The notes below the pieces were generated by a model. That model saw only the letters and a list, made by a program, of their open reading frames with translations, ran no database searches and was not told where the DNA came from. Positions 6,587 through 30,845 of a stretch of 64,000 bases of DNA are shown piece by piece. Location: contig NC_043010.1 of NCBI RefSeq assembly GCF_006345805.1, positions 41,664,001 through 41,728,000 on the forward strand, written 5' to 3'. This DNA is from Octopus sinensis (taxonomy: Eukaryota). Made by a program: the position numbers and the translations under genes. Within the stretch, counting starts at the first letter, position 1. Each line of letters begins with the position of its first letter.

Positions 6587-6682
6587 TTATATTTGGAAGA
6601 GGTGAATGAGTAGCATGACAGACAAAATGCCATGCGGTATTTTATTGAGTCTCTTCACATTCTGCGTCGAAGTATCATTATG
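6587..6682 (-). CDS. PAN-domain gene, putative terminal exon 7 (phase 0): HNDTSTQNVKRLNKIPHGILSVMLLIHLFQI*, GPI-signal-like
   Basis: Acceptor ctattttcag|; phase matches the exon 6 donor; polar spacer then hydrophobic tail; AATAAA follows. Confidence 0.55.
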   Translation of the reverse strand, partial: HNDTSTQNVKRLNKIPHGILSVMLLIHLFQI

Positions 6683-6849
6683 CTGAAAATAGACGCTAAA
6701 TCGTCTCACCACTTTAAAAGCCACAAATTTACACACATGTTGAAATCGAGGGAACAAGCTAACGGCAATTAACAACAATATAGATAGCCCTGGATTAGCT
6801 AATTTCTGGATTTGCCCAATGGCTTTTCCTCATCAGCAGGGCATACATA

Positions 6850-8110
6850 CAGGAAATAAATGAGATATTTATACATACCCACAGGAAAGTAATCTAGAAT
6901 CGGATAAATTCTTTGGTTAAAATAATCCAATGTAGCAGTGACATGGGTATGGAATTTGGGAGTTCCAAAAGCTCAATGGTCAGTATGAAAAGTGGGAAGA
7001 AAGCTGTCACCGGAGAAACCATGAGGGAACCAAGAGATAGTAGATACAAGTATTTGGGGATTTTAGAATTCAACACTGAGCAGTTGCAGTGGTTAGATAA
7101 AGTGCGTCCATTCTCAGATGAACTGATGAAGAAATTTAAAAGTTGGATAGAAAGACGAGAAAGTTAATGATATTGTATGGAGTTTTACATCCTGAAGGAA
7201 ATATAAATAGAATGTATAAGAAGAGAAAAATGGTTGTAGAGGTTTAATCATTGTTGATTATTGTATAAGGAGTTGAAGGAGAACTCTTGCAGAATATTTG
7301 GTAAACATCGGCGAAGAGTTGCTGCGATATGTAGCAGAAGATATGTGTTTAAATGAAAATGAAATGCATAACCAATGAGCGGGAGAGAAGAGACAAGATC
7401 TTCTGGAAATAAGAATGTGTGGTCAGTTTGAAAGAGATACACAGGAAATCAAGAGTAAAACTTCACGGACAAGACTTAAACAAGGTGTGAAAGCCTTATA
7501 ATTGAAGCACAAGACCAAGTTCTTGTTACTAGTTCGGTAAAGTATAACATCTACAAAATTTCCAACACCCAAAAATGCAAACTATGAAAAAAGGATGTGG
7601 AAAAGTTTTGGACAAAAAGAATACTAGCGCCTCCGTGATAAAATCTGTATTTCCATTGGTTTTTATATCGTATATACCAATACGAAATAAAAAAAAATGT
7701 TATGGACATGAGGCTAGTAAAGTAATGCAAGAGGATGAGAAAGAAACGATATTCTGAGATTATAATTTTCAGACTGATAGAGTAATTGAACATAGCCGAT
7801 CGGACATGATCGTATTGGACAAGAAAGACAAATACTGTCATATCATTGACATGCCAAATAACATGAATATTGCGAGGTTGAAAAAAACCCACTAAGTACT
7901 CCGAACCGAAAGTACAGATTGCAAAACTGTTTGTAATGCGAGAGGGTAATGTAAAAGTGATAACAGTTGTTATAAAGGTATTAGGGTCAACCCTATTGAA
8001 ATTTCGAAACTTCTTAAAGCGGTTGGGAATTCCATGCAAGATCATACAAAAATCAGCCTTGCTAAGTACTGCGCACATTTGAAGGAATGTATTGTTGTCT
8101 TAAGTCCTTG
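6850..8110 (+). mobile_element. R4/Dong-like LINE, decayed RT 3' half plus RLE
   Basis: YKYLGILEF, EAQDQ, CK motif, PDMIVLDK, VITVVIKVLG..ALLSTAHI; many stops and frameshifts. Confidence 0.8.
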
Positions 8111-8876
8111 TGACGTGACAGATTACTAAATACTCCGGTGCATTTTCCATCTACAATGCATGACAAAGTTAGTAATTTTTGGGAACAGGGTAAGTCAATT
8201 ATATTGACCCCAATACTTGACTGGTGCTTATTGACCGGTCCCGAGTATTAATATTGTTCTACCTGTATTTAACAGAAATTCACTGGCGTCTTAAGTGAAA
8301 TAACGCAGCAATTACCACAAAGAATATTTACTCATATTTCGATATTTTTCAATATAAATAGAAAAACAAAAATTTTTTTATCATTGTGACACATGATATA
8401 ACGAAAAAGAGATCTTTTCGGTTTGAAAGACAGTTTTTAACATAATTTCTAGGTAACTAAAAATTTTTAAACTTCGTATACTGGTAGAATGTGTTTATAA
8501 AACATCTTTTTTTCTTGGCTTATTGAGAAAATTCTATAGTTTGTAAGATATTTGTTGATTTTTTCTTCAATTTCTGCAATTTCAAACAATCAATGACGGC
8601 CATTGAGGTAAAAAAACACTCTGTGCCGTATGAATATGTCCCTCGTTTAAAAAACAGATTGGGTTTATTTACATTTGTGAAAAAAAAAAGATACCCTTCC
8701 CCCACCCCTAACCCTAAGTCTAACCCTAACTAACTCTAACCCTAAAACAGATCGAAATGCAATAGATTGATATTAGGGTCATAATTATGGGTGACAATTT
8801 CATATGACACCGCTAGAAAAAACTCCCGTTCAAACCGAAAAGATCCCGAAAAAGAAATATTGTCATTCATACATAC

Positions 8877-8997
8877 CAAGCTAACTTCTAGCCCAATGCA
8901 ATTATCATTTACATCTATTTGTTGCAAACACCAAAGTAAGAAACTTTTCAATCTTCCTTGTCTTGTCAACATTTGGAAAGTGAATGTATCAACAACA
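8877..8997 (-). CDS. PAN-domain gene, putative exon 6 (phase 2-0): VVDTFTFQMLTRQGRLKSFLLWCLQQIDVNDNCIGLEVSL
   Basis: Acceptor atttcttttctag|, donor TTG|gtatgt; only the phase-2 frame is open, matching exon 5. Confidence 0.5.
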
Positions 8998-9394
8998 CTA
9001 GAAAAGAAATATAAATCTCATCATGAAATATAAAAATAGGGGTCCTGCGTTATTTGCTTGAATCATAGCTATGTGGAGAAAGTGATACAGTTTGAAATTT
9101 TCTATGTATTACGTATCATATGTGAAATAAAAGTCATCACAAATTTCTTTCTGGAATGTTATTAACAAACTTCCACCGAAGTATCTGTCGCGAATAATAT
9201 TCTTCAGGTTAATATTTTACTTTTTGCGACAAATTCTACAACCCACAAACTAATTCAATTCTTGACCAAATCAAATGCGGTTAAGTTCATTTAAAAGGGC
9301 CATTTCATTTCAAGCTATTGCAAATGAAACTCACAATAAAATGTGTGCTCAAAAATGATTTAGTAATGCATAGATGCAACTTCTAAGCAGTATA

Positions 9395-9610
9395 GTTCTT
9401 TTATTCTTTTATTCCTTTACCTGTTTCAGTCATTTGACTACGGCCATGCTGGAGCACCGCCTTTAGTAGAGCAAATCGACTCCAGGACTAAAGCCAAGTA
9501 CTTATTCTATCGGTCTTTTGCCGAATCTCTAACTTACGGGGACGTAAACACACCAGCATCGGTTGTCAAGAGATGTTGGGGTGGGTGTGGACAAACACAG
9601 ATACACAAGC
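9395..9610 (-). mobile_element. SINE family B, 3' half
   Basis: Identity with 4098-4300; a short 5' head of the same family reappears at 12030-12069. Confidence 0.85.
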
Positions 9611-9619
9611 ATACACACA

Positions 9620-10101
9620 CACATATATATACATATGCATATATATATACATACATATGCATATATATACATATATATACATACATATGCATATATATAC
9701 ATATATATACATACATATGCATATATATACATATATATACATACATATGCATATATATACATATATATACATACATATGCATATATATATACATATATAT
9801 TCATACATATGCATATATATATACATATATATTCATACATATGCATATATATACATACATATGCATATATATACACATACATATGCATATATATACATAC
9901 ATATGCATATACATATACATATATACATATGCATATATATACATATATATATATATAGATACATATGCATATATATACATACATATGCATATATATACAT
10001 ATATATATATATATACATATGCATATATATACATATATATACATGCATATATATACATATATATACATATATACATATGCATATATATACATATATACAT
10101 A

Positions 10102-10137
<36 letters not shown>
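9620..10137. repeat. TA/CATA/CATATG compound minisatellite (about 30-bp unit)
   Basis: Repeated atacatacatatgcatatatatacatatat. Confidence 0.95.
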
Positions 10138-10141
<4 letters not shown>

Positions 10142-11261
10142 CTTGTTATCAGTCGTAAGACACTTGTTGTTTTCACCGTTAATGCTTCTGTATTTCATGT
10201 TTCTGTATTCCATTATTGTTTTTTGTTTTTTTATATCTGTCCCTTTTGCTGTCCTGGTGTTCGTATGCATTCGATCCTTCTTCCAGGAAATCTACGCTTC
10301 CAGCTTAGTTTTTCTTGGAGGGCTGGCCGTGATCTAGTAATCTCAAGATTAATCAGCCGAAATTACTACGATGATCCGGTTCTTGACTGAAGACTGAGGG
10401 GTTCGAATGTCCTGTCCATGTTTATTGCATCGTCTTCTATGAGTTATACGTTCTTGTCCATGTTGTATTTTTCTACATACCTTAACATATATTCCAGGCG
10501 CCCCGTACCCCCTTTATCATTAATGTGAACACATATTCTTAATAATTGGTACGACTCTCTGTTTGTCTCTCTCTCTCTCTCATTTTTACTTTCTCTCTAT
10601 TCATCTTCTCTTTCCTCTGATCCTTTGGTCTAGTCTTCCACTACCCTCCTATTTCTTTGTCTCGCTCTGCACTCACAGGTCATTCTTCGACACCCATCCC
10701 TTCTCCTCTCTGATTCCTTCTTTCTCTCTCTTCTCTCTTTGTTGCGTTTTGTCCCCCTTTTCTCTCTCTCTCTTTCTTTTCTTTTCCCTCTTCTCTGTCA
10801 CGTGACTGTTGGCCGAAATCTGCCTTTCAGCTCCTGACCCTCGTCGTGTTAACATCGTTGTTCTTCGTCCGCCGCTATAAAGGCTTTTTCCAATGCGCCA
10901 GAGAAAAAATTTGTTTGCTTGTTATCAGTCGTAAGACACTTGTTGTTTTCACCGTTAATGCTTCTGTATTTCATGTTTCTGTATTCCATTATTGTTTTTT
11001 GTTTTTTTATATCTGTCCCTTTTGCTGTCCTGTTGTTCGTATGCATTCGATCCTTCTTCCAGGAAATCTACGCTTCCAGCTTAGTTTTTCTTGGAGGGCT
11101 GGCCGTGATCTAGTAATCTCAAGATTAATCAGCCGAAATTACTACGATGATCCGGTTCTTGACTGAAGACTGAGGGGTTCGAATGTCCTGTCCATGTTTA
11201 TTGCATCGTCTTCTATGAGTTATACGTTCTTGTCCATGTTGTATTTTTCTACATACCTTAA
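10138..11261. mobile_element. Non-autonomous element with two 348-bp direct repeats (pLTR/TRIM-like) inserted in (TA)n
   Basis: 10138-10485 and 10914-11261 show one visible mismatch; ~430-bp non-coding core; (TA)n on both flanks. Confidence 0.8.
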
Positions 11262-11281
11262 TATATATATATATATATATA

Positions 11282-12025
11282 CGGTTGTTTATTTGACCCC
11301 CCACGAGTGATAAACTTAATCACTGGCTTAAATTCTGCTAGCTCTCTTTCGATTATATCCTTTCTGAAAACGGCAATGGCGTCGAGGGTCCTAGAGTAGG
11401 TCTTCAAAACCACCGTCTTAATTTCAAGTTCTTTTAACTTTTTTTGGGGTGGTATAATTTCCCACTCCACCAACTTTTCATTGTTATTTTCCCATGTTTT
11501 TTTTTTTAAAAAGTCCAAAAATACAGTTCCTAAAATATAAAATAATTAAGGAAAAAGAAGGAAGAGGAAAAAAGACCAAACAAAAAGGAAGGAGAGAATT
11601 TTTTTTAATAAAAGATAGCTGAAGAAAAAGCAACAGTTCAAAACACAGCAAAGGCCCCTCGGTACTCCAGGCCAAAATTTAAACGCAATTGTAAAACAGT
11701 TAAAAAATCATTCCAATTTTCTTCTCATTGGTACTCCTTGACAAGAACAATGTTGTTGAAACACTATTTTCAAACAAAATTTTGCGGCAGGATACGCCCA
11801 CCAAACCAATAGTTTTCGCAATTAAGTGAAAAAATATTAACTCAGCTACAGGTAGACTAGAATCCAGTGAGGCCTTCTTGTTAGTAAAAAATAATTGCGA
11901 CAGACAACAGAGCCCCACTAGACACAAAAGATCTTACCTTACGGCTGAGTTTCAAAAATCTTCAATTGAAGACGACTTCAAAAGCACGTCTAACAGTGGC
12001 AAACATAACTCTGTCTCACCCATGC
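11282..12025 (-). mobile_element. Probable LINE (Tx1/L1) 5' UTR and ORF1 N-terminus
   Basis: ORF ..KTVVLKTYSRTLDAIAVFRKDIIERELAEFKPVIKFITRG, truncated at (TA)n; family assignment is inference. Confidence 0.45.
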
Positions 12026-12681
12026 ACAATGGTAAGCAAGCTACTTACCACACAGCCACTCCTGCGCCTATATTGTCTTATTTTTTTTCACTATTTTTGT
12101 TTTAATGGCTCTTTTTAAAAATCTCAAGGGGAGGAATTTAATTCTGTAAATCTAAATTTGACAGTAAACAAATAAGCAAGCAAACAAACAAACAAACAAA
12201 CGAAGAATCAAATTTATGGAGCAACAAGTGGTTAAATTTGAATAAGAGAAACGTTCCAATTTATCTTGTAACTATAAAAGTACGTTCTAATCTACCTCAT
12301 TTCTGCTCCACGCTAAGGCAACTAATTCAAAAGAAGCCCCCCACAAAAAAAGTAGTGAAAATAAGAGCCTATAATGGTAAACAGTGGTGGGGGTGTGGTC
12401 GTAGCTATGTGCGTTTGTTGTTTGTGATAGCTATACTTGTTTGTTGTTGGTATTTATGATAGTGTTCGTGGCGGTGACTACAATCATTCACAACCGTGAC
12501 GAATGCATTAAATTGTACAGCATTTTTTCAAAACAATTTTGATTCATAAAAATAATTCATTTTTTTCTCCATTGGCACTTTATTACTTACAAAATTATCA
12601 CCAGCTTCTTCATAACAATACCTTATCAAGATAATCACCACGGCAACAACACCAAACTATTACAGAACATATGCTTGTATG

Positions 12682-12740
<59 letters not shown>

Positions 12741-12775
12741 CGGAAATAAATAAACGTGTAAAAGAATATATAGAC

Positions 12776-12842
<67 letters not shown>

Positions 12843-12961
12843 GGAGTAAACACATAAATGTGAAACAAGGTGGAAAAAAGAGTACTCAAATACCAGTGGT
12901 AGAGTAATATGCTTTATTTAAATATATATATATTATATATATATTATATATTATATATATA

Positions 12962-13004
<43 letters not shown>

Positions 13005-13007
<3 letters not shown>

Positions 13008-13200
13008 TTTTATGCTTTTACATGTTTGAGTCATTTGACTGCAGCCATACTGGAGCACCGACTTTAGTCGAACAAATCGCCCCCAGGACTTATTCTTTGT
13101 TACCCTAGTACATATTCTATCTCTCCCTTTTGCAGAACTGCTAAGTTACGGGGACGTAAACACACCAGCATCGGTTGTCAAGCGATGGTGGGGGAAAAGC
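13005..13200 (-). mobile_element. SINE family B, 3' half
   Basis: Similarity to other copies in the window. Confidence 0.8.
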
Positions 13201-13250
13201 TCCCGCCATATATATATATATATATATGAGAGACCAAAGTGTATGTACGC

Positions 13251-13313
<63 letters not shown>

Positions 13314-13442
13314 CTAGTAGCATAAATAACCCGCGTTGCCCGGTATAAAGGTAATAATGAGTTTTCATTAAAAAATTTGATACAATCTGATACTCGACTG
13401 AGGAAAGAAAACTTTGGATGACCTGTTCTTGTTTTCTTTGTA

Positions 13443-14830
13443 TCGTCTATCTGGATGAGAAATATGGAAACACCTTCTCCACCTATATCCAGAACAACTG
13501 GAAAAGATACCTCGACGACTGTTTTATCCTCTGGGATAAAAGTATAGAGAAACTTGAGGAATTTAAAATACTATTAAATGGAATAAATGATAATATACAA
13601 TTCACGATGGATCATAACGAAGAAGAATTACCATTTTTAGACATCCTCATTAAGAAAACCGGCAACAAAATAGAGACAGATATCTATTATAAACCGACAG
13701 ACTCCAAACAGTACCTACCCTTTGATTCATGCCACCCACGACACACTAGAATAAATGTCCCTTTTTGTTTAGCTAGAAGGATTTGCACCATAATATCAGA
13801 CACAAACACCCGACACACACATCTCCAGGAACTTAGAACCACACTCACAAATAGAAACTATCCACAGCCCCTAATAGACAGTGCAATCCAACGGGCACTT
13901 AAATTAAGTATAGAAGACCTGAGACAAACAAAACCAAAAAAGAAAGAAGAATTAAAAACCCTTCCCTGCATCTCTACACACAACCCACTTAACAATGAGG
14001 CCTTCAGCACCATACTACAAAGCACAGCCCTACTAAAGGGAGACCCAAAGATGAACCGGATCCTCGAAACACACACCATCATTAAAAGTAAATGGCAACC
14101 AAAATCCTTGAAAAGGATTTTAAGCCAAGCTAAACTGCACTCAACATCAACCACAAAACCAGCAGTTAGAAAATGTGGAAGGCCCAACTGCGGAATCTGT
14201 GTCATCTTGGTAGCAGGTTCAGAATTTATACCAGAACAAGGCCATCAGTTCACCATTAGAACAAACTTCCCCTGTGCATCAGAAAACTTAATTTACGTCT
14301 TAACATGCGCAGGCTGCAATAGGCAATATATAGGCCATACGAAAAATAGCTTACGTAAAAGGATGGCGGTGCATAAATCACAAATTAGAAACCCTGAATA
14401 CCGGAAAATACCGGTCAGCGGACACATAGATAGATGTGCTGCAAATGAAAATCCGAAATTTACAACTTACCCACCTTTACAAATTCAGTGACAGCGTAAC
14501 CTTCACTCAACGCTAAAACAAAGAACTTTATTTCATCAAAAAATTTAGACCAAGTTTGAACACCCTGGGCTAGGAATATTAAAACAAAACATTGGTCTTC
14601 CGAAAAAGGAAAAACGAAATTCTACCACAACCACTACGACGGCTCCCACTAGCACTACTACTACAACCACCGTGGTCACTACCATTAATGCTACGATCAA
14701 CAGCCCCCTACTGCTACCACTGCTGCTACGGCCACAGTGAGAGAATTAAAATAGTGGAGGTGGGGGGAATTACAATTTCTCAGATCCTTAAACAGTCACC
14801 CCCCGCTGGCAGTGGTATGTCTTAGGGAAG
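13443..14830 (+). mobile_element. Penelope-like element, 5'-truncated (RT C-half plus GIY-YIG endonuclease)
   Basis: 357-aa ORF: RYLDDCF, LPFLD, SCHP, CxxxxCxxC, LIYVLTC..QYIGHT..RMAVH; frameshift near 14470, then PSLNT. Confidence 0.95.
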
Positions 14831-14864
14831 GAAGAATTTATAAAAAGATTTTTTTCTCTGCGAG

Positions 14865-15170
14865 CAGATCTGATTTTGATTCGTCAAAAAATTGATGACG
14901 TTTTACCTCCGTGGTCAAGCTTGTCGCCCTACTTGGTTGGTTTCCTTACAAGATACAGTTATGGGTCAGATCTGATTTTGATTCGTTAAAAAATTGATGA
15001 CGTTTTTCTTCCGATGTCAAACTAGTCGTTCTGCTTGGTTAGCCACCTTACAGGACACAGTTATGGGTCAGATCTGATTTTGATTCGTTAAAAAATTGAT
15101 GACGTTTTTCTTCTGTGGTCAAGCTTGTCGTTCTGCTTGGTTGGTTTCCTAACAGGATACAGTTATAGGT
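14865..15170. repeat. 3 x 102-bp tandem repeat
   Basis: Units start cagatctgattttgattcg at 14865, 14967 and 15069. Confidence 0.95.
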
Positions 15171-15551
15171 CTTTTCCTTATATTCGTTGAAGCTGGGTAT
15201 ACTTCTCCACTACACTCGACAAAACAGTAAGGAACGACTATGGACTTTTTCTATTATACTCTTTATAATATAATTGATAAGGTTCGCCTTTTTAAGAACA
15301 TGGATTCTATTGAATGTATATAGCATGGATTCTATTGAATGTATGTAACAATTATGAACTGTTCCATTATACTGTTTATTATAAATTTTTTTGATAAGGT
15401 TCGTTATTTCAAGAACCGAAACATGTAAAATTAAAATTTATCTAATATAGTGGCGTTTTCAAACTTCTTTTTTACAAATATATACCCACTCGTATACGAT
15501 CTACTCTTATTATAAATATATAAAAAAAATGTATGTATATATATATGTATG

Positions 15552-15597
<46 letters not shown>

Positions 15598-15599
15598 AT

Positions 15600-15830
15600 T
15601 GGTAAAAACGGTAAGATAACAAAAGAAAGAAAGAGACCTCAATATTATGTAAACAGAGCAAATTTATCTGTAAAATAATATGTGACAATTATTCAATAGC
15701 CACGATAAAACTCTGAGTTTCGGATGCCGAGGTGGAAATCCACAACACCATCTCTTCGGTTATCTCATATTTTGAGGATGCAATTTCCTCGTAAGGGATT
15801 GATAATAACAATCCAAATGCCAACTGACTT
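15600..15830 (-). mobile_element. Penelope-like 3' fragment next to (TA)n with a decayed hammerhead motif
   Basis: Minus strand ccgaaga-gatg..catc-cgaaactc at 15712-15762. Confidence 0.5.
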
Positions 15831-16448
15831 TATCAATAAATGGAAAGAAAGTTCCTCAATATATATGTATAAACAGTCTAATTAATTATAAAGTTAACAA
15901 AAGAAAATGGATGACAAAAAATGTAACAGCTACTTGGTTACATTTGTCTTTATCCCATCTTCCTCCCATAAACTTTTATAAATATATTATAAATATATTT
16001 TTCAAACGCATTTGATGTTTTAGCAATATTTCAACGATCAATATTAGCTAAATTTCAACGATCAATATCTGATCACATGAACTCCGCGTCCTAGTAAGCT
16101 GTTTACATTCGAAATTTTCTAACCACAGTCACCAAATTAGTTACTTCGTAATTCAAGATCGGAAAATATACTTACTTTTCTCTGAAGATACCCGGCAATA
16201 TATGGTTTATTACATCTATAATTGTTCGAATGTGGATGATTCAAACATACCGTGGGATCGAAACATGTGTAGGATGTTTTTTCGGATTAGTTTGGTTGTT
16301 TTGTTGATCCGGTTCTTTTTATCCTTATTCTTATCGGTATCACTTTTACTTTGCATTACTTTTCCGTTGTGACACAAATAAAATGAACCAAGTATCTATT
16401 ATATTTTTCTTCTCCATTTTCTTATACATATATACATATATATATACA

Positions 16449-16531
<83 letters not shown>

Positions 16532-16860: not shown

Positions 16861-17005
16861 ATTTGTTGTCCTCCATCGTTTGATACAACAGAATTTCTTC
16901 GTGTGTCAAATACAAAAATTGTACGAGATTGTATTTGTACAAGAATGCCATATTTCATAATAACATCAGACGTTCTGAATAACTGCAGCTTCCAGGAGGT
17001 CATTA
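16861..17005 (-). CDS. PAN-domain gene, putative exon 5 (phase 1-2): MTSWKLQLFRTSDVIMKYGILVQIQSRTIFVFDTRRNSVVSNDGGQQ
   Basis: Open 47-codon frame from acceptor tatatttcaaag| (weaker AAG) to strong donor AT|gtaagt. Confidence 0.45.
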
Positions 17006-18065: not shown

Positions 18066-18128
18066 CTTCTCCATTCTGTAAGGAAGACTGTGTTGTAGGT
18101 AGTATTGGATTTCCTGTTGACTGCTTTC
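18066..18128 (-). CDS. PAN-domain gene, exon 4 (phase 1-1 S/T/P linker): GKQSTGNPILPTTQSSLQNGE
   Basis: Acceptor ttttatatttgcag|, in frame with exon 3; donor AAG|gtttat is weak; read-through alternative ends at 18007. Confidence 0.65.
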
Positions 18129-19720: not shown

Positions 19721-20424
19721 GCATGTGCAAGTTGTTTGCAAGACATCATACATACACACATATAAATACATATATATATATGTACGTACATATATGTATG
19801 TATATGTATGTATTTATGTCAAGTGGCTCTTGAGCACTACTGGTACCATGTAATTCAGTACAATCTGTTACATGGTCGGGTCGTCGGCGACCAAACTAGC
19901 AACACTACCAAGCATGCTTGGTGAGGAAGGTGATTGTTGGACACCCAGCGGGACAATAAATAACACCCGTCAAAAGCTAGAAGAACTACAGTGTAATCAA
20001 CGGCCATTTAACAACATGTGTTTGTGGACATGTGTGTGGAGTGTTTGTTTGTGTGTGTGTGTGTGTGTGTATGTGTGTGTATTGTATATATTGTATTTCA
20101 AACTGTATGTGTGTATATTGTATATATTGTGCTTTAAATTGTATTTATTATATCTCAATTCTTATTCTTATTTTTGCTCAATTGTATCTTAATTTTTAAT
20201 TTTGTTTTATTTTACCCCCTTTTTTGTATGATAAATAGTAAGGGGTGGATAGAGCTCCTTTGTTTACCCAAGCCTCGGTGAAAGCAGTCTATCCAGGAGA
20301 AGGTAACTATGAATTTAAATACTTCACTTCTGTCTTGCAGTTAGCCTTTGACTGGGCAAAAAGCGGGAGAAAGGCACTGATATGAAACCTGCGACGGCAA
20401 ATGCACCCAATAATGCACTGTATG

Positions 20425-20482
<58 letters not shown>

Positions 20483-20523
20483 ATTTGTATACAGAAAGAG
20501 AGAGAAGTGAGAGAAAGCGCGCG

Positions 20524-20588
<65 letters not shown>

Positions 20589-20636
20589 GATATAAATAAA
20601 TATTTAGCTATAAATACAAGGATATATAAAATATAC

Positions 20637-20867
20637 CTTTAAGTTGATAACTGCTCCATCTTGAGTTTTTGGCTTCAAGATTTAATTGAGAAAACGTCAG
20701 ATTACTCAAGAGACACAATCCATCTGTTTGGCAAAAGGTAAATGATGAACACAGTGCTTGTTTCAGACAAAATAATTTGCATTCCTGTAGAGTGGAGTAG
20801 AATCTCTGGGTCGAGTATTTTTCGGCAAATGAAGCGCCCAAAATAGACATAATTTTTTCTTTGTTGT
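20637..20867 (-). CDS. PAN-domain gene, exon 3: PAN/Apple domain 2 (phase 1-1, 231 nt)
   Basis: ..STLQECKLFCLKQALCSSFTFCQTDGLCLLS..; acceptor ttttataacctag|, donor AAG|gtatat. Confidence 0.9.
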
Positions 20868-21270: not shown

Positions 21271-21471
21271 CAGTGCTTTTCAAACTTTTTGCTGGAGCAG
21301 AACCCCAAGAAAACATTCCACTGGTTCGAGGAACCCCTGTGCAATAATTTAATAGTCTTATGCACACATATCTGCACAGGAGACTTTAAAATTACTGCCG
21401 ATTTTAGCAGTTTTGTAACTTCTTGCGGAACCCCTGGACTGTACTGGCGGAACCCTGGTTGAAAACCACTG
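21271..21471. mobile_element. hAT (Charlie-like) MITE
   Basis: TIRs cagtgcttttcaaac / gttgaaaaccactg; 8-bp TSD ttctagac / ctctagac. Confidence 0.85.
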
Positions 21472-21924
21472 CTCTAGACTAAGTAACTTGAACGCATGGA
21501 AATCGACATCTTGTTCAGTACTTAGAATAGTTGTTGAATTTGTTCTGGAATACAATTTTCTGTTATCTTTACCTTTTTGTTGTCATAGTATTACATACAA
21601 TACAATAAAGTGTCGAAAATGTCCACTGTCCAACTTCGACCTGCTCACTAACAACATACCGCTGCATCCAATGAATGTTTGTCTTAAGTTTTAGCGAAGC
21701 AATATCACTGCACTACATTTGACATCAATTATTGTATTCACCATACACTCCTTTCAAGCGTACAGAAATTAACTTTACTTTGACATCAATTCTTTAAGGT
21801 GAATCAGCAAAAAAAACTGCATTTAAGCATGCACACCTCCGCACGTATGTATACATGCACATGCATATCTGTATGTATGTATGTATATATATATATATAT
21901 ATGAATTTTTTGTGTAATCAGATA

Positions 21925-23960
21925 AAAAAAACAAGGCTGTATAGATATTAGAGCATTTATAGATAGAAGGTCTTACAGCTGTTTCTAGAATATTAATTAA
22001 TAGTAATTAATATCCCTTCATCGGAGACGGTGTGAGAGGAAAAATTAAGTCATAGTTAGTTTCGATGTGATATAAATAGAGAGTGAGGTGGAGGACAGAA
22101 AATAGATGTAAGATATGTATGGGTATTGAGTTCATAAATCTGTTTTATAGGCATAATGGTATATATGTGTATTATTAAAGGCGGCGAGCTGGCAGAAACG
22201 TTAGCACGCCGGGCGAAATGCTTAGCGGTATTTCGTCTGCGTTACGTTGTGAGTTCAAATTCCGCCGAGGTCGACTTTGCCTTTCATCCTTTCGGGGTCG
22301 ATAAATTAAGTACCAGTTACGCACTGGGGTCGATGTAATCGACTTAATACCTATGTCTGTCCTTGTTTGTCCCCTCTGTGTTTAGCCCCTTGTGGGTAAT
22401 AAAGAAATAGATATATATGTGTATTATTCCAAAGTCCGTTGAGTAAAATCCAAAAGTCCCACAGAGTTTAATATGAGTCCATCCAATGTAAAGTTAATAA
22501 GCAATGTAAGCTTCTCTTAAAGTTGGTCCTTCCCAGTAGGGAATTTATATAGAATGTAGCATACCTTTATTTTCGAGGCGGTGGGAGAGAGACGGGAGGA
22601 GGAGATGAGGTCATGGATAGTGGAGGACAGTCTGTTGATAGTAGGCGTGGGTTGGTGGGAAGAGGGCAATAGAAGGAGGTGTCTTGAAGTTGGCGGAGAG
22701 CTTCAGCTTTGAAGAGGCCTGCACGCCACACCACCACGGCTCTACCCTTGTCAGCCGGTTTTATGATGATGTCTTTGCGGTGTTGGAGACATCGGTGGGC
22801 TGGGAGTTTGGCCGAGGAGATTTTAAAATGTCAGGGACACCAACGAAAGTTAAACCGGTCCACAACACGTTGGCAGATGCTTGCAAAAGGATTGACTGCT
22901 TGGAACTGGCCTGGTGCTGGTGTCCGGTGGGATGGTCGCCGGCCCAGGTCGGTGAAGCAGTCCTCTTCTTTAGATGCAGGTGGAGTGTTGTTGAATAGTG
23001 CATATAGTCTGACGCGATGCACAAAGCTATGAATATCAGCACGGGTCTGAAATTCGTTACTAGATAGAGTGAAGAAGGTGAAGCACAGACCCTTACTAAG
23101 AAGAGAGCGCACCGCCTCAGAGAGGAGAAGAACAATAGACTGAAGTGGGTAGGATGGATGAATTAGATGTGGGAAGGGTGGTAGGGGTAGTGGAAGGCTG
23201 GGAGGCAGTGGAAGGCTGGGAGAAGCGAGAGGAAGAGTAACTGCATGGGAGGGTTGGATTAACGGAAGGGTTGGGGCGACGATGAGGGGGAGTGTATCAG
23301 GAACGAAGGGGTAGAGGAGGGGGTGTATGTAGTGGCATGGGGTGTGTCAGAATGAAGGAGTGAGTAGAGTTTATGTTGTTTAGTACGAGGGAGTTACTCA
23401 TGGAAAAGATGATTTAAATTGATTATAAAGCTTAGAGTGGAATGTGCAAAGGAAGGTGAAAGACAGGAGAAAAAGGTGGAATAAGCGAGAGGGAGAAGGC
23501 GGTCGAGGGTGTGTATTTTGGAGAGATTAGAACGCATGGTGGCAACGCATAAGCAACGCCTGAGAAAGGAAACGCGTTTAGAGAATCGTCTTTTTTTGAA
23601 AATCAGTAGGGAAAGATTAATAGAGGGTTGAAAGTTGCGGAAAGAAAGCGTGAAAAGGTGTCTCTTTAGGCGGTAGTGAAAATGGAAGAGGAGAGATTTG
23701 CAATCGGGCTGTCTGGAAAAAAGGAGAAAAAAGAAAAAGAAAAAGAAGTAAAGGAGAGAGAAAGGCAAAGTAATGATATACGGAGTATAAAAGTTCAAAA
23801 AATTCAAAAGTCGTGAAGAGCAGAAAAAAGGAAGAAAGAAGAGAAAGGAGAAGAAAAGAAGAAAAAACGAAAAGAAGAAGAAAAGGAGAGAGAAAGGCAA
23901 AGTAACAAAGTTCAAAGAAGTTCAGGCGTCGTGGTATGTTGGAGCGATTTTTCATCAACG
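21925..23960 (-). mobile_element. Penelope-like element, internally deleted (N-terminal ORF plus 3' end with hammerhead motif)
   Basis: SLLSKGLCF..NEFQTRADIHSFVHRVRLY and RVSFLRRCL, typical PLE N-terminal motifs; hammerhead-like motif at 21970-22028. Confidence 0.75.
22179..22408 (+). mobile_element. SINE family A nested in the PLE
   Basis: Near-identical to 4673-4909. Confidence 0.9.
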
Positions 23961-24867
23961 TGAAATTCGTAAGTATATCCAGTGGTAAATCGGGTGGAGT
24001 GTTGGTAAGTAGATGAGAGGTGCAAAATGTTCAGGCAGTAGTTGAGATATGTAGGTCCAAAGAGAAGGAGGTTAAAGCAGGATAAAACTGGGGTGTCGAC
24101 TGTGAGCGTATAATATATAGTTAAAATTTACAGAAAAACAAAAGACGAAGACAGGTGTATAAACAACAACCAGGTGCATTAGTTTGACGCTCGGGAAAGT
24201 GAGAAAGTCTTTTACGATTCGAGCCAACGCTTTTCAACAGAAAGGAACACGAGGAAATAAACAGAGAGAGAATAAAAATAAAGAAAAACATGTGGATTTA
24301 GCGATCAAGCATGGCGACTGATTTGGAAAAAAGTTTGAGAGGGGAGGTACAAAGAAGGGGAGATAATAAAGTATTGGTGATCCCAAAACGAAGTTGAGCG
24401 TGCGTGTGTATGTATGTGAGAGTGTGTGTCGAATTTAATAATTAGATAACTTAATAGGTCTAATAAAATTTGTCTCAATTTAATACATGAATATAAATAC
24501 AGAAAGGTTTTCAATAGACATACAATTAAGATTGCTTTATAGTTTCATCCTTAATAGGAATTACATTACATAACTATTGTACAACTATTGTACAGCATGC
24601 TCACTGAATGGATCATTATTTATCTAGCGGTATTTCATCTACCTTTATGTTCTGTGTTCAAATTTCTCCGGGGTCGACTTTGCCTTTCATCCTTTCTGGG
24701 TCGATAAATTAAGAACCTGTTGCGTACTGGGGTCGAACTAATTGACTAATTTCAGGCCTTGCGCCTAGAGTAGAAAAGACTATTCATCTAATGGTACAGA
24801 CAAATACATACATAGGCAGATAGACAGCTCCGTAAAGTCAAGGAGGGATTGGATTAAGCTTACTTAC

Positions 24868-25119
24868 ATTTAATAAGTTGGTAATAGTTATAACCATTTA
24901 CTGGTACCAAAGATTCAGTTGCGGCACTTGTTGGATATATCATACATTGATTCAATTCTTCGTTGAAAACAAATGAGTGACATGTCGACCAACTCAGACA
25001 CCAGTTTGCACAAGCGCTACTATAAGTACCAGTGATATTAATTTCAGTGATTGTTTGAGATTCACTGCTAGATAACTTTGCAGATTGTACTTCAATAAAC
25101 CATTGTCCAAGTTGATAAC
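24868..25119 (-). CDS. PAN-domain gene, exon 2: PAN/Apple domain 1 (phase 1-1, 252 nt)
   Basis: ..YSSACANWCLSWSTCHSFVFNEELNQCMIYP..; acceptor tttttttgcag|, donor AAAT|gtaagt; absent from the ORF track because it has no upstream Met. Confidence 0.92.
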
Positions 25120-25556
25120 CTGCAAAAAAATAGTTATATTAAAGATCAGAAGAAATAGCTTTTTTTCCTCTTTTTAGTTGAATATAAAGGTACTCAAAAA
25201 CTTAGTAACTGGTGAGAAAAGTAATTTAGCTGTCATTGAAGGCTAACGGATAAAAGTCTTCTAAAACACTTTAAGATAATTCTTTTCGTGGGAGAGTTCA
25301 ACATTAGTCTTCTAAATCATAACATTAATAAAAACAACTGCATTCAGAAACCTTGTACAGCTAAATTTATTCCTTCCGCATGTACTGCAGCATATTATTA
25401 GCATAAAGCAATTGTTGATATTGAATTATATTAGTGCAAGCATCAATAGATGGATTCCAAATAACCTTAAGCTATAGGAAATTGTAAAGTATTTAAAATA
25501 TACACAGCACTAAATTTACTTAATAGCATTTATTAAAATTACTACATAGTAAGTAT

Positions 25557-26480
25557 TAGGGGTACGGAAAAGTAATGTCACATTTCATGAAATGTGTTCA
25601 AAACAGCATAAAACAAAATAAATATATTTATTCATTCAAGTATAATCGCCATAGTTTGCAGTAACATTACGCCACCCCGGAACCAGTTTTCTGATAAGTT
25701 GGGAAAAAAATCAGGTTCTTTAGAAGAGAAAAATATTTGAAGTATTGTTTCGGCATCATGCATGCTTCTGAAAGCTTTTTCACTGTTAAAGTACCCTTGT
25801 GACCTGAATATCTTATCGTGCTTGGTCTGCTGAGCAGGAAGGGAGAGTTAGTTTCACAGTCTATTGAATTTATATTTTCTTGGATTATCTTTGCTGAAGG
25901 GGTTTTGCATTATCATATTGCTGGATGACTCCCTTTCTGTTATCTGAAGCTGGTTGATTTTTGAGCAAAACTTGTTAACAATTCAATTCCGCTTTTTAGC
26001 TTTTTAGCTTTTGTTCCAATAATTCTAAGTGAACAACATTTATTGCATACCACTAAACGCACAGCAAAATCTTCTTTGAGCATTGGAACTGGAATTTGTA
26101 TTTTGGTTTATTCTATCCATTTCCCATTGCTTGTTGCAATTCGATTAAGAAAAAAATGTTTGTTCATTCTTGACAAGCAATTTGTTGCAAATTGTTGAAC
26201 ACACTGCTTTATTCTCCGTTGACAGCTCATAAAGCTTCTACTTTCCTTTTCTATACACTTTCTCAATCTGCTTAACATGATGTTGCAAGGTTTATTACGC
26301 TTCCAGTATAAGCCCCCGATACTTTGACGCGGATCTTCTTCAATTACTATTTTCACCGTGTCGTTATTGAGAACAGTTGGTCTTCCTGATCGAATCGGCC
26401 CATCCAAAAGGTCGAAATAACTGTTTTTGAATTTATTAAACCACTATTGACATTTCTGAACACCATTAGGATATACTGTA
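25557..26480 (-). mobile_element. Decayed mariner-like transposon
   Basis: TIR-like ttaggggtacggaaaagtaat after TA; RSGRPTVLNND..EEDPRQS and RIAT..KWI fragments. Confidence 0.7.
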
Positions 26481-27219
26481 TGTATGTTTTTCCTTGAACG
26501 TGTTGCATTGTTGCCCTTAAAAAATTCATGAAGCATGCAATTCCGAATATTTAGCTTGCTAAATTAATTGTCTTCTATGGGCAATAAGATCCAGATTAAT
26601 GTTTGACCATTAACTCTATGCTGATTGGTTAATTGATTACAAGGACATCTTTTGTCGGCTTGCAAACTATTTGTGGTGTGATGTCAAACTATTTGCTTGC
26701 AGACACAGCATTACTTTTCGATACTCTTAATAGTAACTTTACTCTAAGTCAACGAAAACTAAGAACAGTAAATAACAGTTTGTATAACATGGATAAGAGA
26801 ATAGAACTGCAGTTCAAAAATTATCAAATTAAAAGAAAAATAATGTTCAAATTTTAAAGCAATGGCCGCACTTAAGTACTACAACATAACTACTGACTCT
26901 CTCAATTCACCTTTGTTTAAACACTGATGTCTTATTTAGGCAAAATATGAACTTTGAGCGAAGTAAACTCAAATTTAAAACATACATCATAATGATAATT
27001 ATTTCGCTAACCCCAAAGGAAAATTTGATTTCAGAACCCAGAGATAAGACTATAAAACGAACCTATACTAACACTATAAACTCACGTCCAACTAATTGTT
27101 CTATTGTTATTATTTAATAATTTAAAAGAATAGAAGTTTAAAGGCACAGTTTCAAGATTATAAACAACGTGGAGTGAACTTATTTTTACAGTATCAATGT
27201 TGCGCTTTCAAGATAAATA

Positions 27220-28270
27220 CAGGGGTTGGACAAAATAGAAACACCTTAAAATTTCAAACAAATTTATTTTAATATGGGATAGGACCACATTTGGTAGTAA
27301 TTACAGCTTGAATTCTGCGACGTATGGACTCATACAAAGTTTGAATTGGTTCCAAAGGAATTTTTGTCCATTCTTCAGCTAAAACAGTCTCCAGTTCTTG
27401 TAGTGGTGGTGGTGGAGGATATCGAATCCTTACTTGTTTTTCTAAAATGCACCATAAATGTTCAATAACATTGAGATCTGGGGACTGGGGTGGCCAGTTA
27501 AGATGTTCAACTTCACTAGAATGTTCCTTGTGCCATTCAGTAACAACTTTAGCTGTGTGAATTGGTGCATTATCATCTTGAAAGATTGCGTTTCCCTCCG
27601 GAAACAGTTCCGCAACTATAGGATGAATTTGATCAGATAAAATGCTTAGCCTTGACTATTAATTCTGCCATGAAGGGGAACCACTGGGCTAGCGGATTTC
27701 CAAGACATAGCCACCCCCAGATCATCACAGCTCCTCCTCCATGTTTAACAGTTGGAAGAAGGTAGTCTGGGTCAAATGCTTCTTTTGGCTGTCAACACAC
27801 GTGGTCGGGAATAAGTTAAAGGATGACTCGTCCGAGAAAATAATATTCTTCCACTGCTCTAGGGGCCAATTCTGTAGGTTTTTACTCCACTCTAAACGCT
27901 TTGCAACGTTTGTTTTTGAAAGCAGTGGTCTTCTGATTGTAGCCCTCCCGTGAAATCCGGCTTTGTGTAACTCCTGGCAAACAGTTTTTGTAGAAACTGG
28001 ATAATATTGGGTTCTGTACTTTTGTGATCCTCTCTAACAATTCGCATAAGAGTCCGACGGTCCCTATCTGAAAGTTTTGGTTTTCTTCCGGAGTTTTGTT
28101 TCGAAGAGGAGGTTTTTTCCCTCTTTCTCAAATGCTGTCATTACTTTCGAGACAGTACTTCATGATACACCAAACATTTTCGTTACGCTAGCGCCTGCCA
28201 TACGAGCACTAACAATTTGATCTCTTTGAAAGTTCGATAGATCTGTCATTTTAATGAATTTTAATTACCT
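27220..28270 (-). mobile_element. Tc1-like (DD34E) transposon, frameshifted, one TIR
   Basis: SGRKPKLSDRDRR, DESS, FQDDNAPIH, SPDLNVIEHLW; TA|caggggttggacaaaat at 27220. Confidence 0.92.
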
Positions 28271-30772
28271 TTTTCTTGTGATATCTGAAAAGAAACAGCA
28301 ATTTTAGCAAAACATATTGAGCAACACTAATAATAAATCAAAATGCATAAAAATAAACTGGTACCTATCTTATCGACCCCGAAAAGATGACAGGCAAAAT
28401 CGACCTCGGCAGTATTTAAAGACGGAATTTAAAACTCAGAATGTAGAGAGGGACGAAATACCGCTAAACATTTTGCCCGGTCCTCATTTGAAAATATTAA
28501 CAGAACAATTCAACCACTAACTTCCTTGCCCAAAATGTTTTAAACTAACTAAAATAGAAGACTTCTAGAAAATTACTTTACAGAAACATTTTTGTTATGT
28601 TATATTGGGAAATGTTTCAAAAATAGAACCTAAGCTTTAGAAAACAAAGATTCGTCTTCACAAAAGACGAATCTCTAAATTATGTTTTATTTCATGCCTT
28701 AGCTGCCTTAGTTTAGAACTGATATCAAAAGCGAGCAAAGTACAGTTGCTGTTGTCTATCTGATCTGCAACTTAACTTAATTATTCTTATTTATGAAACT
28801 GGTTGCATTACGTTGCAGAAGCTCACAGTAACATTTTGATTTCAAATTTTACTACTGGTATTTAAGGCACTATTTTGTGTAATGATTTTAAAGGGTTTCG
28901 TTATCATTTTTATCTGATGCAATGAACTACCAAATATTTAAAACCCGTTCTTAAGAAACACGTGAAATATCTCACTATGAACATAGAAACACTTTTCTAA
29001 AGTAACCTTTACTGTATTTGTAAAAAAACATTCACCTCAAGCCTCTGTAGTAGTTATAAACCGGACTATTTAATATTGGCTTATCAACAATTAATTGATA
29101 AGGCACGTATAATGTAAACATTAACATACTAAAACAAATAATAAATCAACAATAGTCTTATCGATCTATATGGGATTTTATGTCCATTTTTTGTTGTTGT
29201 TTTGCAGATAATGGTTCATTGGCATGAGGAAAGCAGAAAGTAATTGTAAGAGAACACGTGTGATTGCGTTTTCTTCAGTGTTTTAAAACGTCCACTCTAA
29301 CAATGACAAAATATGTTATTAATTGCTTAAAAATGAAAAAAATCTGGTTAATTCTTGGCTAACTTATGATATGAATGAAATGAAAAGGCTAACGTTTTTT
29401 TCTACCTTAAGTACAATTGAGTAATTTATTATTTAAGATGCATTTTTTAAATGGTACCCACGAACTGGCTTTCCCCGTTGTTTTTCAATTCCAGTTCACA
29501 GTTGGTCAATGTTAAAATGTACAACATTATATGATGCCATTAATATTTTTACTTTTTATTGGCATAGTGTACTTTGGATAATACTAAAGACAGTAAGGTG
29601 TAATCTGGAAGAGAGCTTTGGTTCTTATAGCCGATTATGTTGCGGCTCCAACGATGATTTGTCTGAAAGAAGATGCGTAACCAGACCAGGATATCGCCTC
29701 TTAAATAGAACTGAAATTGAGTTGTGTACTTAACATTACACAACTTTCTAAAGTGATTTCTACTTGAACTAATTTGTAACGAAATAAATACGAAAAGACA
29801 CCTATAAGACATGGAAAATACATGACGACACTCCTTTCACCTAAACCCCAGAAAAATTAAGAAATATCACAGTTCAAATTCTGTTATATTAATAACACAA
29901 TTTTGTTAGGTAACCGTGTGTTGGCGATTGTTAGTGTTCAGACTCATAATTCCTATTGAGTAGGCCGACAATTAAAGGTATTTCAGGTGTGGCTACCTCG
30001 TCTTTTTAAGGGCATCCGTTATTACATTATCCAATATATTTCGTAGGATACGATATAAAGGACATTTGGCCTGGTCCATAATCGTTATATTGAAGTGAAA
30101 TGCTAGTTCGTAGACATTATTAAAAAAAAATACTTTTATTGAATACTTTATTGAGTAAACCTTAGAATAAAACGCATTAGAACAGTTCAATCAGCTTTTA
30201 GGCGTGTATTTTATATTGAACTCTAAACTCTGCTATTATCTATTGTTGCACGACGCATGACGAGTAGACAGAGTAAATACATAATAATGAATAAAATCTC
30301 GAAATGTTATAGAAAACAAAGTATTATTTAAAGATAAATGGTACTTGTATCCAATAATCAACTGAAATAGTTAAAATATTTAAGCGCATTTACTAATTTT
30401 CTTTAAACTCAGTCGTTTAGAAAATACTTACATAGAATACAATTTAAGTAAAGTGATAAGACGAATTTACTGTGCAAAAACATATATTTCAAGGCATAGC
30501 AAATGTCATCAGTGCTCATAAAAACTACATTGCTTTAAGGAAAATGCTCCAAGCTACAGTAGATTTTCAAATGATTTAATAATCATGAGTGTAGAAATTT
30601 TGTCTGCAATTATACTTGAAAATACTCGATACTCCGTAGTCATAAAAAAATAAATAAAACTAAAATCTAAAATTTCTAGACCAATACAGTACTTTGATAT
30701 AAGTTTCATGAATAAAAGACGATTTATTGTATCATGTTAAATTGATGGAAAATATTGAGTTCATATACATAC

Positions 30773-30845
30773 CTTGAATGATTTCTAAAATTTCCGCTAT
30801 GCCTATTAAAATCAAGAGCAGGTTATTGCTGAAAAAGTATGCCAT
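30773..30845 (-). CDS. PAN-domain gene, exon 1: signal peptide MAYFFSNNLLLILIGIAEILEIIQ(G)
   Basis: ATG at 30845, hydrophobic core, phase-1 donor CAAG|gtatgt in frame with exon 2. Confidence 0.75.

What the first reader, a model, noticed from the sequence alone, without database searches (positions are those of the whole stretch)
6587..30845. Hidden 7-exon gene: signal peptide, 2 PAN/Apple domains, linker, unknown module, GPI-like tail (326 aa)
Seen in sequence: seven minus-strand segments with GT-AG sites chain in frame with intron phases 1,1,1,1,2,0 (73+252+231+63+145+121+96 = 981 nt). They end in a hydrophobic tail followed by two AATAAA; sequons NIT, NLT and NDT are present. Established: the C-x3-C-x5-C-x2-F-x-F-x6-C core is the short 4-Cys PAN/Apple fold, which binds proteins or glycans and is typically encoded by phase 1-1 exons. 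Inference: a lineage-specific GPI-anchored cell-surface protein with an architecture I do not recognise (no protease, ZP or lectin partner). Exons 1-3 are strong; exons 4-7 are less certain.
Basis: partly seen in the sequence, partly recalled or inferred. Interest (0 to 1): 0.8.

Follow-up and report, generated by a model that had tools for sequence, protein, structure and literature searches.

The report
Annotated octopus two-PAN secreted protein gene
The region holds a real seven-exon octopus gene for a small, probably secreted protein with two PAN domains, but public databases already annotate it and the proposed GPI membrane anchor comes from a wrongly chosen last exon.

Summary
The window is Octopus sinensis chromosome CM016872.1. 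The finding is RefSeq gene LOC115219223, "uncharacterized protein", isoform X1, 324 aa. The RefSeq exon, its acceptor and its stop/AATAAA are conserved in all three species.

Each PAN domain passes the Pfam PAN_1 cut-off on its own. All 12 splice sites and all exon lengths are conserved across the three octopuses. dN/dS between O. sinensis and O. bimaculoides is 0.35 (P = 4e-4), and 0.26 for the C-terminal module. That 118-aa module has no Pfam, PDB-sequence or fold match. An exhaustive HMMER search of 1.84 billion proteins found no relative outside Octopus.

Best reading: a probably secreted, glycosylated, soluble PAN-type binding protein with an Octopus-restricted orphan C-terminal domain. 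Its ligand and tissue are unknown. The gene is already known and uncharacterised. Interest is low to moderate.

The parts
30773..30845 (-). Exon 1 (73 nt): ATG at 30845. Encodes MAYFFSNNLLLILIGIAEILEIIQ(G), the presumed signal peptide. Donor CAAG|gtatgt, phase 1.
   Evidence: Identical in O. vulgaris. Splice site conserved in O. bimaculoides. Hydropathy of LLLILIGI is 3.5.
24868..25119 (-). Exon 2 (252 nt, phase 1-1): PAN domain 1, with Cys61/65/71/83 and sequon NIT at aa 52.
   Evidence: Pfam PAN_1 30.5 bits, E = 3.4e-7, scanned alone. omega 0.24 against O. bimaculoides.
20637..20867 (-). Exon 3 (231 nt, phase 1-1): PAN domain 2, with Cys138/142/148/160, the lineage-specific extra Cys154, and sequon NLT at aa 164.
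   Evidence: Pfam PAN_1 27.3 bits, scanned alone. In Logan contig L001 the exon is 89.6% identical and the upstream intron 76.8%.
18066..18128 (-). Exon 4 (63 nt, phase 1-1): linker GKQSTGNPILPTTQSSLQNGE.
   Evidence: Matches RefSeq X1/X2. Splice sites conserved in three species.
16861..17005 (-). Exon 5 (145 nt): first part of the orphan C-terminal module (VMTSWKLQLF…SNDGGQQI).
   Evidence: No differences from O. vulgaris. Single copy.
8877..8997 (-). Exon 6 (121 nt): middle of the C-terminal module (VVDTFTFQML…CIGLEVSL), with Cys278 and Cys288. Skipped in isoform X2, which shifts the frame and ends the protein in ILC*.
   Evidence: O. bimaculoides isoform X3 ends soon after exon 5 in a way consistent with the same skip; its junction was not mapped.
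6403..6492 (-). True exon 7 (90 nt including the stop): IVLTNLNTGQVYSSVFNKELTPIPSTVYV*. The stop TAA (6405-6403) overlaps AATAAA (6404-6399).
   Evidence: The acceptor, reading frame and stop/AATAAA are conserved in O. vulgaris and O. bimaculoides.
6587..6682 (-). It is intron 6 sequence in the annotated models and is not part of the gene product.
   Evidence: 5 of 96 differences and an in-frame TAA in O. vulgaris. The same TAA, a second stop and no acceptor in O. bimaculoides.

Best explanation
The region is the single-copy Octopus gene LOC115219223. It has 7 exons over 24.4 kb on the minus strand (30845-6403), and its CDS is 975 nt. It encodes a 324-aa extracellular protein made of four parts: an N-terminal hydrophobic leader, inferred to be a signal peptide; two tandem four-cysteine PAN modules of the plasminogen/HGF N-domain type, each on one phase 1-1 exon; a 21-residue Ser/Thr/Pro/Gln linker; and a 118-residue C-terminal module predicted to be beta-rich. 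The module has two conserved cysteines and no detectable relative outside Octopus.

Shown: the exon structure, the PAN membership by HMM, the conservation of the reading frame and splice sites in three species, purifying selection on all parts, and the absence of a hydrophobic C-terminus.

Inferred: the protein is secreted and soluble. It is N-glycosylated at NIT and NLT. By alignment to the HGF N domain it is disulfide-bonded C61-C83/C65-C71 and C138-C160/C142-C148. It acts by binding an extracellular protein or glycan through its PAN modules, with the orphan C-terminal module giving a second binding or self-association surface. A predicted isoform that skips exon 6 would remove the second half of that module.
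For: The 185-aa query made from exons 1-3 matches RefSeq XP_029645218.1 (X1) and XP_036364795.1 (X2) at 100% identity, and exons 1-7 as mapped translate to X1 in full. Pfam PAN_1 scores 47.3 bits for exons 1-3 and 45.5 bits for full-length X1, and each domain alone is above the cut-off. The core cysteines align with the HGF N domain. The O. bimaculoides ortholog XP_014770156.1 is also 324 aa with the same tail. All 12 GT/AG sites and all exon lengths are conserved in O. sinensis, O. vulgaris and O. bimaculoides. NG86 omega is 0.35 overall (36 of 61 changes non-synonymous against 79% expected, P = 4e-4), 0.26 for the C-module (P = 0.003) and 0.36 for the PAN domains. There are no indels in 975 nt, while the flanks have indels. 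Against O. vulgaris, exon divergence is 0.6% and intron divergence 1.2%. In a fourth octopod, exon 3 is 89.6% identical and the intron 76.8%. The real tail has a maximum hydropathy of 1.0, and the highest-scoring 19-residue hydrophobic windows all lie in the leader.
Against: No transcript or junction reads could be examined, so expression rests on the Gnomon models of two species and the O. vulgaris annotation. The signal peptide could not be scored: no SignalP is available, the n-region has no positive charge, and O. bimaculoides has an Arg inside the hydrophobic core. The leader evolves at omega about 1. The AF2 models have low confidence, pLDDT 33 and 54, so neither the PAN fold nor the C-module fold is confirmed structurally. 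The ligand, tissue and function are wholly inferred from the family. Divergence in the 150-nt intron flanks against O. bimaculoides (6.5%) is no higher than in the exons (6.3%), so nucleotide conservation alone does not mark the exons at that distance.
Confidence: 0.8

Rival explanations
1. One reading: a GPI-anchored cell-surface protein whose last exon is 6682-6587 and ends in a hydrophobic GPI signal.
For: In O. sinensis the segment has a good acceptor (tattttcag|CAT), is open in phase 0 and ends in GILSVMLLIHLF, mean hydropathy 2.4 over 12 residues.
Against: It is absent from both RefSeq isoforms, from the O. vulgaris model and from the three O. bimaculoides isoforms. O. vulgaris has 5 of 96 substitutions (P = 0.007 at the intron rate), an in-frame TAA, and NDT changed to DDI. 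O. bimaculoides has the same TAA plus a second stop, and its acceptor is missing. The hydrophobic stretch is only about 12-14 residues. 147 alternative chains show that such open segments are common here.
Confidence: 0.03
2. The C-terminal module is a degenerate bacterial-type cadherin-like / Big_9 (Ig-like beta-sandwich) domain, not an orphan. This is compatible with the main explanation.
For: The exhaustive phmmer search gave two non-octopus hits, P0005 (E = 1e-5, 7 stretches) and P0006 (E = 2e-4, 4 stretches). Both are built of Big_9/Cadherin_4 repeats. The motif G-x-V-x-I-x(4)-F-x-F-D…VDTFTF aligns with the repeat's G-x-V-x-V…F-x-Y-D…VDxFTY. A repeat HMM built from those two proteins scores 15.7 bits on the module, and 0 of 2000 shuffles reach that score; the best shuffle scores 7.3.
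Against: The significance comes from summing the same weak match over many repeats of one protein. A single repeat gives about 16-31 bits, which is not significant across 1.84 billion proteins. The Pfam Big_9 and Cadherin_4/5 models give no hit even at E <= 10. Only model positions 40-91 of 101 are covered, and too few residues lie N-terminal of the match to complete a domain. The HMM test is post hoc. Foldseek finds no Ig-like match, although the model is poor.
Confidence: 0.15
3. Exons 5-7 are not really translated: either a Gnomon ORF extension over a non-coding 3' part, or a decaying gene. Only the two-PAN part would be functional.
For: The module has no relatives outside Octopus and no domain hit. 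Both RefSeq species also have predicted isoforms that end soon after exon 5. No Logan transcript-derived protein was found in the cluster.
Against: omega is 0.26 for aa 207-324, with 11 synonymous and 11 non-synonymous changes against 78% non-synonymous expected (P = 0.003). There are no stops or indels in three species. Exon lengths and all splice sites are conserved. Exons 4-6 show 0 of 329 differences from O. vulgaris (P = 0.018).
Confidence: 0.05

Closest known systems
RefSeq LOC115219223 (O. sinensis XP_029645218.1) and its ortholog LOC106869122 (O. bimaculoides XP_014770156.1; UniProt A0A0L8HR65, 'Apple domain-containing protein')
   Same: It is this gene. The window's exons translate to X1 exactly, and the ortholog is 90% identical (31 of 324 differences) with the same seven exons.
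   Different: Both database entries are automatic and carry no function. No paper mentions them.
PAN module of the plasminogen / hepatocyte growth factor N-domain type (Pfam PF00024)
   Same: Both domains exceed the PAN_1 cut-off. There are four core cysteines with the C-x3-C … C-x11-C arrangement, aligned with the HGF N-domain cysteines, and an F-V-F strand follows the third Cys.
   Different: Sequence similarity to the solved HGF chains is not significant on its own (E = 0.12-0.9). There are no kringle or protease domains. The loop between Cys2 and Cys3 is shorter, 5 residues against 9.
Apple domains of factor XI / prekallikrein and of apicomplexan micronemal proteins (e.g. Toxoplasma MIC4)
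   Same: Same superfamily, tandem arrangement and extracellular binding role. MIC4 chains appear among the weak PDB hits.
   Different: From my own knowledge, apple domains proper have a third disulfide that joins the N- and C-termini. The octopus domains have only four conserved cysteines. The matches are not significant (E = 0.5-1.5).
Invertebrate PAN-containing extracellular matrix proteins (PAN+ZP proteins such as Drosophila NompA and C. elegans LET-653/NOAH) and leech antiplatelet protein (a single PAN domain that binds collagen); all recalled from memory
   Same: They are secreted invertebrate proteins that use PAN modules to bind matrix or ligand.
   Different: Pfam finds no ZP or other domain here. 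The leech protein did not appear among the PDB sequence hits. The C-terminal module is unrelated to any of them.

Membership tests
PAN/Apple superfamily (Pfam PAN_1, PF00024) | Profile HMM score above the curated gathering threshold for each domain | tested here: met
   Exon 2 peptide scores 30.5 bits and exon 3 peptide 27.3 bits against a cut-off of 21.4. Exons 1-3 together score 47.3 bits and full-length X1 45.5 bits.
PAN/Apple superfamily (Pfam PAN_1, PF00024) | Four conserved core cysteines (two disulfides) in the spacing C-x3-C-x(5-9)-C-x11-C | tested here: met
   Cys61/65/71/83 and Cys138/142/148/160. All eight are retained in O. bimaculoides, and the four of PAN2 also in Logan contig L001. 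They align to the HGF N-domain cysteines. Disulfide pairing is inferred, not shown.
PAN/Apple superfamily (Pfam PAN_1, PF00024) | PAN fold: a central helix packed on a beta-sheet | tested here: inconclusive
   The AF2 single-sequence model has pLDDT 33, which is too poor to judge.
Apple domain in the strict sense (FXI / prekallikrein type) | Six cysteines, with a third disulfide linking the N- and C-termini of the domain (from established knowledge) | tested here: not met
   Only four conserved Cys per domain. The fifth Cys in PAN2 (C154) is Arg in O. bimaculoides and in L001.
GPI-anchored surface protein | C-terminal hydrophobic GPI signal on the translated product | tested here: not met
   The conserved annotated tail IVLTNLNTGQVYSSVFNKELTPIPSTVYV has a maximum hydropathy of 1.0. 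The hydrophobic tail exists only in a non-annotated segment that carries stops in two sister species.
GPI-anchored surface protein / secreted protein | Cleavable N-terminal signal peptide | not testable with these tools
   No SignalP is available. The hydrophobic core LLLILIGIA is present (hydropathy 3.5 over 8 residues), and G-I-A|E is a possible cleavage site. O. bimaculoides has Arg at position 15.
Bacterial cadherin-like / Big_9 Ig-like domains | Match to the family HMMs over the whole domain | tested here: not met
   No Pfam hit at E <= 10. A home-made repeat HMM covers only positions 40-91 of 101 at 15.7 bits, and the test is post hoc.
PAN+ZP cuticle/matrix proteins | Zona pellucida domain C-terminal to the PAN modules | tested here: not met
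   Pfam finds no ZP domain or any other domain in aa 186-324.
Functional protein-coding gene | Reading frame and splice sites conserved, and dN/dS < 1, between species | tested here: met
   omega 0.35, P = 4e-4. All 12 splice sites and all exon lengths are conserved in three species.

The most novel reading that the evidence does not exclude
The 118-aa C-terminal module (exons 5-7) is a genuinely new, Octopus-restricted protein domain kept under purifying selection. It was joined by exon shuffling to two ancient PAN modules, giving a lineage-specific secreted binding protein with a role in some octopus-specific extracellular interaction.
Probability: 0.4. Interest if true: 0.35.

Novelty: already known. 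Interest (0 to 1): 0.2.

Why it matters
It matters mostly as a check on the scan. Reading raw sequence recovered six of seven exons of a real gene and the correct domain family. Chaining GT-AG open segments did not identify the terminal exon and produced a false GPI anchor. Biologically the gene is a small, uncharacterised, apparently Octopus-restricted secreted PAN protein with an orphan C-terminal domain. It could be a modest candidate for studies of lineage-specific genes in cephalopods. Nothing here points to an unusual mechanism.

Tried and rejected
- tblastn of both PAN exons against the window found no further PAN exon or paralog.
- Pfam on the C-terminal module, with either tail, gave nothing.
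- The word-indexed homolog search with the C-module returned only O. vulgaris.
- The exhaustive HMMER search gave only Octopus proteins plus two bacterial repeat proteins. These were followed up and judged a weak lead.
- AF2 on full-length X1 gave pLDDT 33. AF2 on the C-module with a three-sequence alignment gave pLDDT 54. Foldseek against PDB gave a best E of about 1 and TM <= 0.34, which is uninformative.
- The PDB sequence search gave only non-significant HGF and MIC4 hits.
- Literature searches for the locus and accession numbers, PAN + octopus, and apple domain + cephalopod gave nothing. A broad PAN/mollusc search gave nothing relevant.
- An attempt to identify the species behind the Logan contigs (SRR11869384 and others) hit an unrelated paper.
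- O. sinensis and O. vulgaris are only about 1.2% diverged in introns, too close to prove constraint on their own. O. bimaculoides was needed.
- There are no tRNA or Rfam hits in the window.
- The third homolog search was not spent, because the exhaustive search had already answered the lineage question for the C-module.


Full report
**What is at the coordinates.** On the minus strand the ATG sits at 30845. Exon 1 is 30845-30773, exon 2 is 25119-24868 and exon 3 is 20867-20637. Their translation is MAYFF…SSYQLK. It holds the stated C-x3-C-x5-C-x2-F-x-F-x6-C core twice, plus the sequons NIT and NLT.

**The gene is already annotated.** A protein search with exons 1-3 returned 100%-identical RefSeq proteins: "uncharacterized protein LOC115219223", isoforms X1 (324 aa) and X2 (257 aa), from Octopus sinensis. 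The window lies on chromosome CM016872.1 of assembly GCA_006345805.1, at about 41.66-41.70 Mb. No other gene is called within 10 kb. The same 90% cluster holds the O. bimaculoides ortholog LOC106869122 with isoforms of 324, 283 and 260 aa. UniProt names it "Apple domain-containing protein". No paper in the library mentions either locus.

**Exon map.**
- Mapping X1 onto the window gives exon 4 at 18128-18066, exon 5 at 17005-16861, exon 6 at 8997-8877 and exon 7 at 6492-6403.
The finding gives no coordinates for them, so identity is inferred from the lengths.
- X2 skips exon 6 and reads the same last exon out of frame, ending in ILC*.
- The true stop TAA (6405-6403) overlaps AATAAA at 6404-6399. 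A second AATAAA lies inside the exon at 6444-6439.

**Was the chain more than chance?** For exons 1-3 it was: two independent PAN HMM hits sit in splice-bounded open segments. For exons 4-7 it was not.

**Comparative test of the last exon.**
- The O. vulgaris locus (L005, OX597827.1) and the O. bimaculoides locus (L007, CM046614.1) were fetched.
It has an in-frame TAA, and NDT has become DDI.
- O. bimaculoides has the same TAA and a second stop. The sequence upstream of the segment does not align and offers no acceptor.
- Two of the three species carry the stop. The open frame in O. sinensis is therefore most simply a lineage-specific accident.
- The acceptor ttattattttcag|ATTGTG, the frame and the GTTTAATAAAAT end of the RefSeq exon are conserved in all three species.
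The highest-scoring 19-residue hydrophobic windows all lie in the leader.
- The GPI anchor is therefore not supported.

**Is the whole ORF a real coding sequence?**
- All 12 splice sites and all seven exon lengths are identical in the three species.
- The O. vulgaris DNA encodes an intact 324-aa ortholog.
- Between O. sinensis and O. bimaculoides there are 61 substitutions and no indel in 975 nt, giving 31 amino-acid differences.
- Nei-Gojobori omega is 0.35 overall. It is 0.24 for PAN1, 0.49 for PAN2, 0.53 for the linker, 0.26 for the C-terminal module and about 1 for the leader.
- The deficit of non-synonymous changes is significant for the whole CDS (P = 4e-4) and for the C-module alone (P = 0.003).
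- Against O. vulgaris, exons differ at 0.6% and introns at 1.2%. Exons 4-6 have 0 differences in 329 nt (P = 0.018).
- Four Logan genomic contigs from an unidentified further octopod carry exon 3. The exon is 89.6% identical and the upstream intron 76.8%, with omega 0.39.
- One caveat: the 150-nt intron flanks are no more diverged than the exons against O. bimaculoides, 6.5% against 6.3%. The argument therefore rests on the substitution pattern, the frame and the splice sites, not on raw identity.

**Domains.**
- Pfam PAN_1 scores 47.3 bits for exons 1-3 and 45.5 bits for full-length X1.
- Each domain alone passes the 21.4-bit cut-off, at 30.5 and 27.3 bits.
- The nearest solved sequences are HGF N domains and Toxoplasma MIC4 apple domains. 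Their E-values are not significant (0.12-1.5), but the four cysteines align.
- Each domain has only the four core cysteines, so they are PAN modules of the plasminogen/HGF type and not six-Cys apple domains.
- Cys154 in PAN2 is an extra residue specific to O. sinensis and O. vulgaris. It is Arg in O. bimaculoides and in the Logan species.

**The C-terminal module (aa 207-324).**
- It has no Pfam hit with either tail.
- In the word-indexed search its only homolog is from O. vulgaris.
- In an exhaustive HMMER search of 1.84 billion representatives it found only Octopus proteins and two bacterial Big_9/Cadherin_4 repeat proteins, at E = 1e-5 and 2e-4.
- That similarity is a G-x-V…F-x-F-D…VDTFTF strand motif repeated over many copies in the targets.
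- A repeat HMM scores 15.7 bits over 52 residues. This is above all 2000 shuffles, but the match is partial and was chosen post hoc. I treat it as a lead only.
- AF2 gave pLDDT 33 for the full protein and 54 for the module, which it models as mostly beta with one helix. Foldseek against PDB found nothing better than E of about 1.
- Exons 4-7 are single copy in all three loci, so they are not repeat-derived there.

**Most likely function.**
- Shown: the gene structure, the PAN membership, the constraint and the lack of a membrane-anchoring segment.
- Inferred from the PAN family: the protein enters the secretory pathway through its hydrophobic leader, forms two disulfides per PAN module, is glycosylated at N52 and N164, and is released as a soluble protein that binds an extracellular protein or glycan.
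- The conserved orphan module, with its Cys278/Cys288 pair, would give a second interaction or self-association surface.
- The ligand, tissue and biological role are unknown.

**Verdict.** The gene exists but is already in RefSeq and UniProt, and the most distinctive claim, the GPI anchor, is wrong. What remains mildly interesting is an Octopus-restricted, constrained C-terminal domain of unknown fold.

Noticed in passing
window 13418-14491 (+), inside intron 5 of the PAN gene: A 357-aa ORF on the opposite strand with a Pfam GIY-YIG match (25 bits, cut-off 22.6). It looks like the endonuclease end of a Penelope-like retroelement; that assignment is inferred, not tested.
   Followed up: partly
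window 47742-48182 (-) and 56170-56742 (+): Reverse-transcriptase fragments: RVT_1 at 50.1 bits, and at 20.9 bits (below cut-off). They are probably decayed non-LTR retroelements upstream of the gene.
   Followed up: partly
window 27746-27889 (-), intron 1: The peptide WSKNLQNWPLEQWKNIIFSDESSFNLFP resembles, from memory, the Tc1/mariner transposase core. Pfam gave no hit on this 48-aa piece.
   Followed up: partly
L005 (O. vulgaris OX597827.1) 10001-33422; corresponds to window 25119-24868: The O. vulgaris annotation CAI9732977.1 (193 aa) uses a GT inside exon 2, after …NITG, joined to exon 4. This removes both PAN cores, although both PAN exons are intact in the O. vulgaris DNA. It is either a mis-model or a minor isoform.
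   Followed up: partly
window 8877-8997 (exon 6); L007 47906-48026: O. sinensis X2 skips exon 6, which shifts the frame and truncates the C-terminal module. O. bimaculoides X3 (260 aa) likewise ends soon after exon 5, consistent with the same skip, but its junction was not mapped. O. bimaculoides X2 reads exon 6 in a shifted frame.
   Followed up: partly
window ~20745 (codon for Cys154 in exon 3): PAN2 has a fifth, unpaired cysteine in O. sinensis and O. vulgaris. It is Arg in O. bimaculoides and in the Logan octopod, so it is a recent change that could allow intermolecular disulfides.
   Followed up: partly
L007 10001-10073 (O. bimaculoides exon 1): O. bimaculoides has Arg at position 15, in the middle of the presumed signal-peptide core (LLLILIRIA). 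The leader evolves at omega about 1.
   Followed up: no
window 22001-24000: Locally high GC (0.44) and strong GC skew (+0.41) in intron 2. The stretch 23815-23896 is a purine-rich (GAA-type) low-complexity tract on the + strand.
   Followed up: partly
window 22307-22381 (-) and 53271-53345 (+): The same roughly 25-aa translated motif ([23 protein letters not shown]) occurs twice in opposite orientation, so it is a dispersed repeat of unknown type.
   Followed up: no
window 9529-10390, 20400-20600, 52100-53900: Long compound microsatellites (TA/CA/TATG-type and CT runs) that create spurious 100-250-aa ORFs in several frames.
   Followed up: no
That is as conserved as the coding exons, and the reason is unknown.
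   Followed up: no
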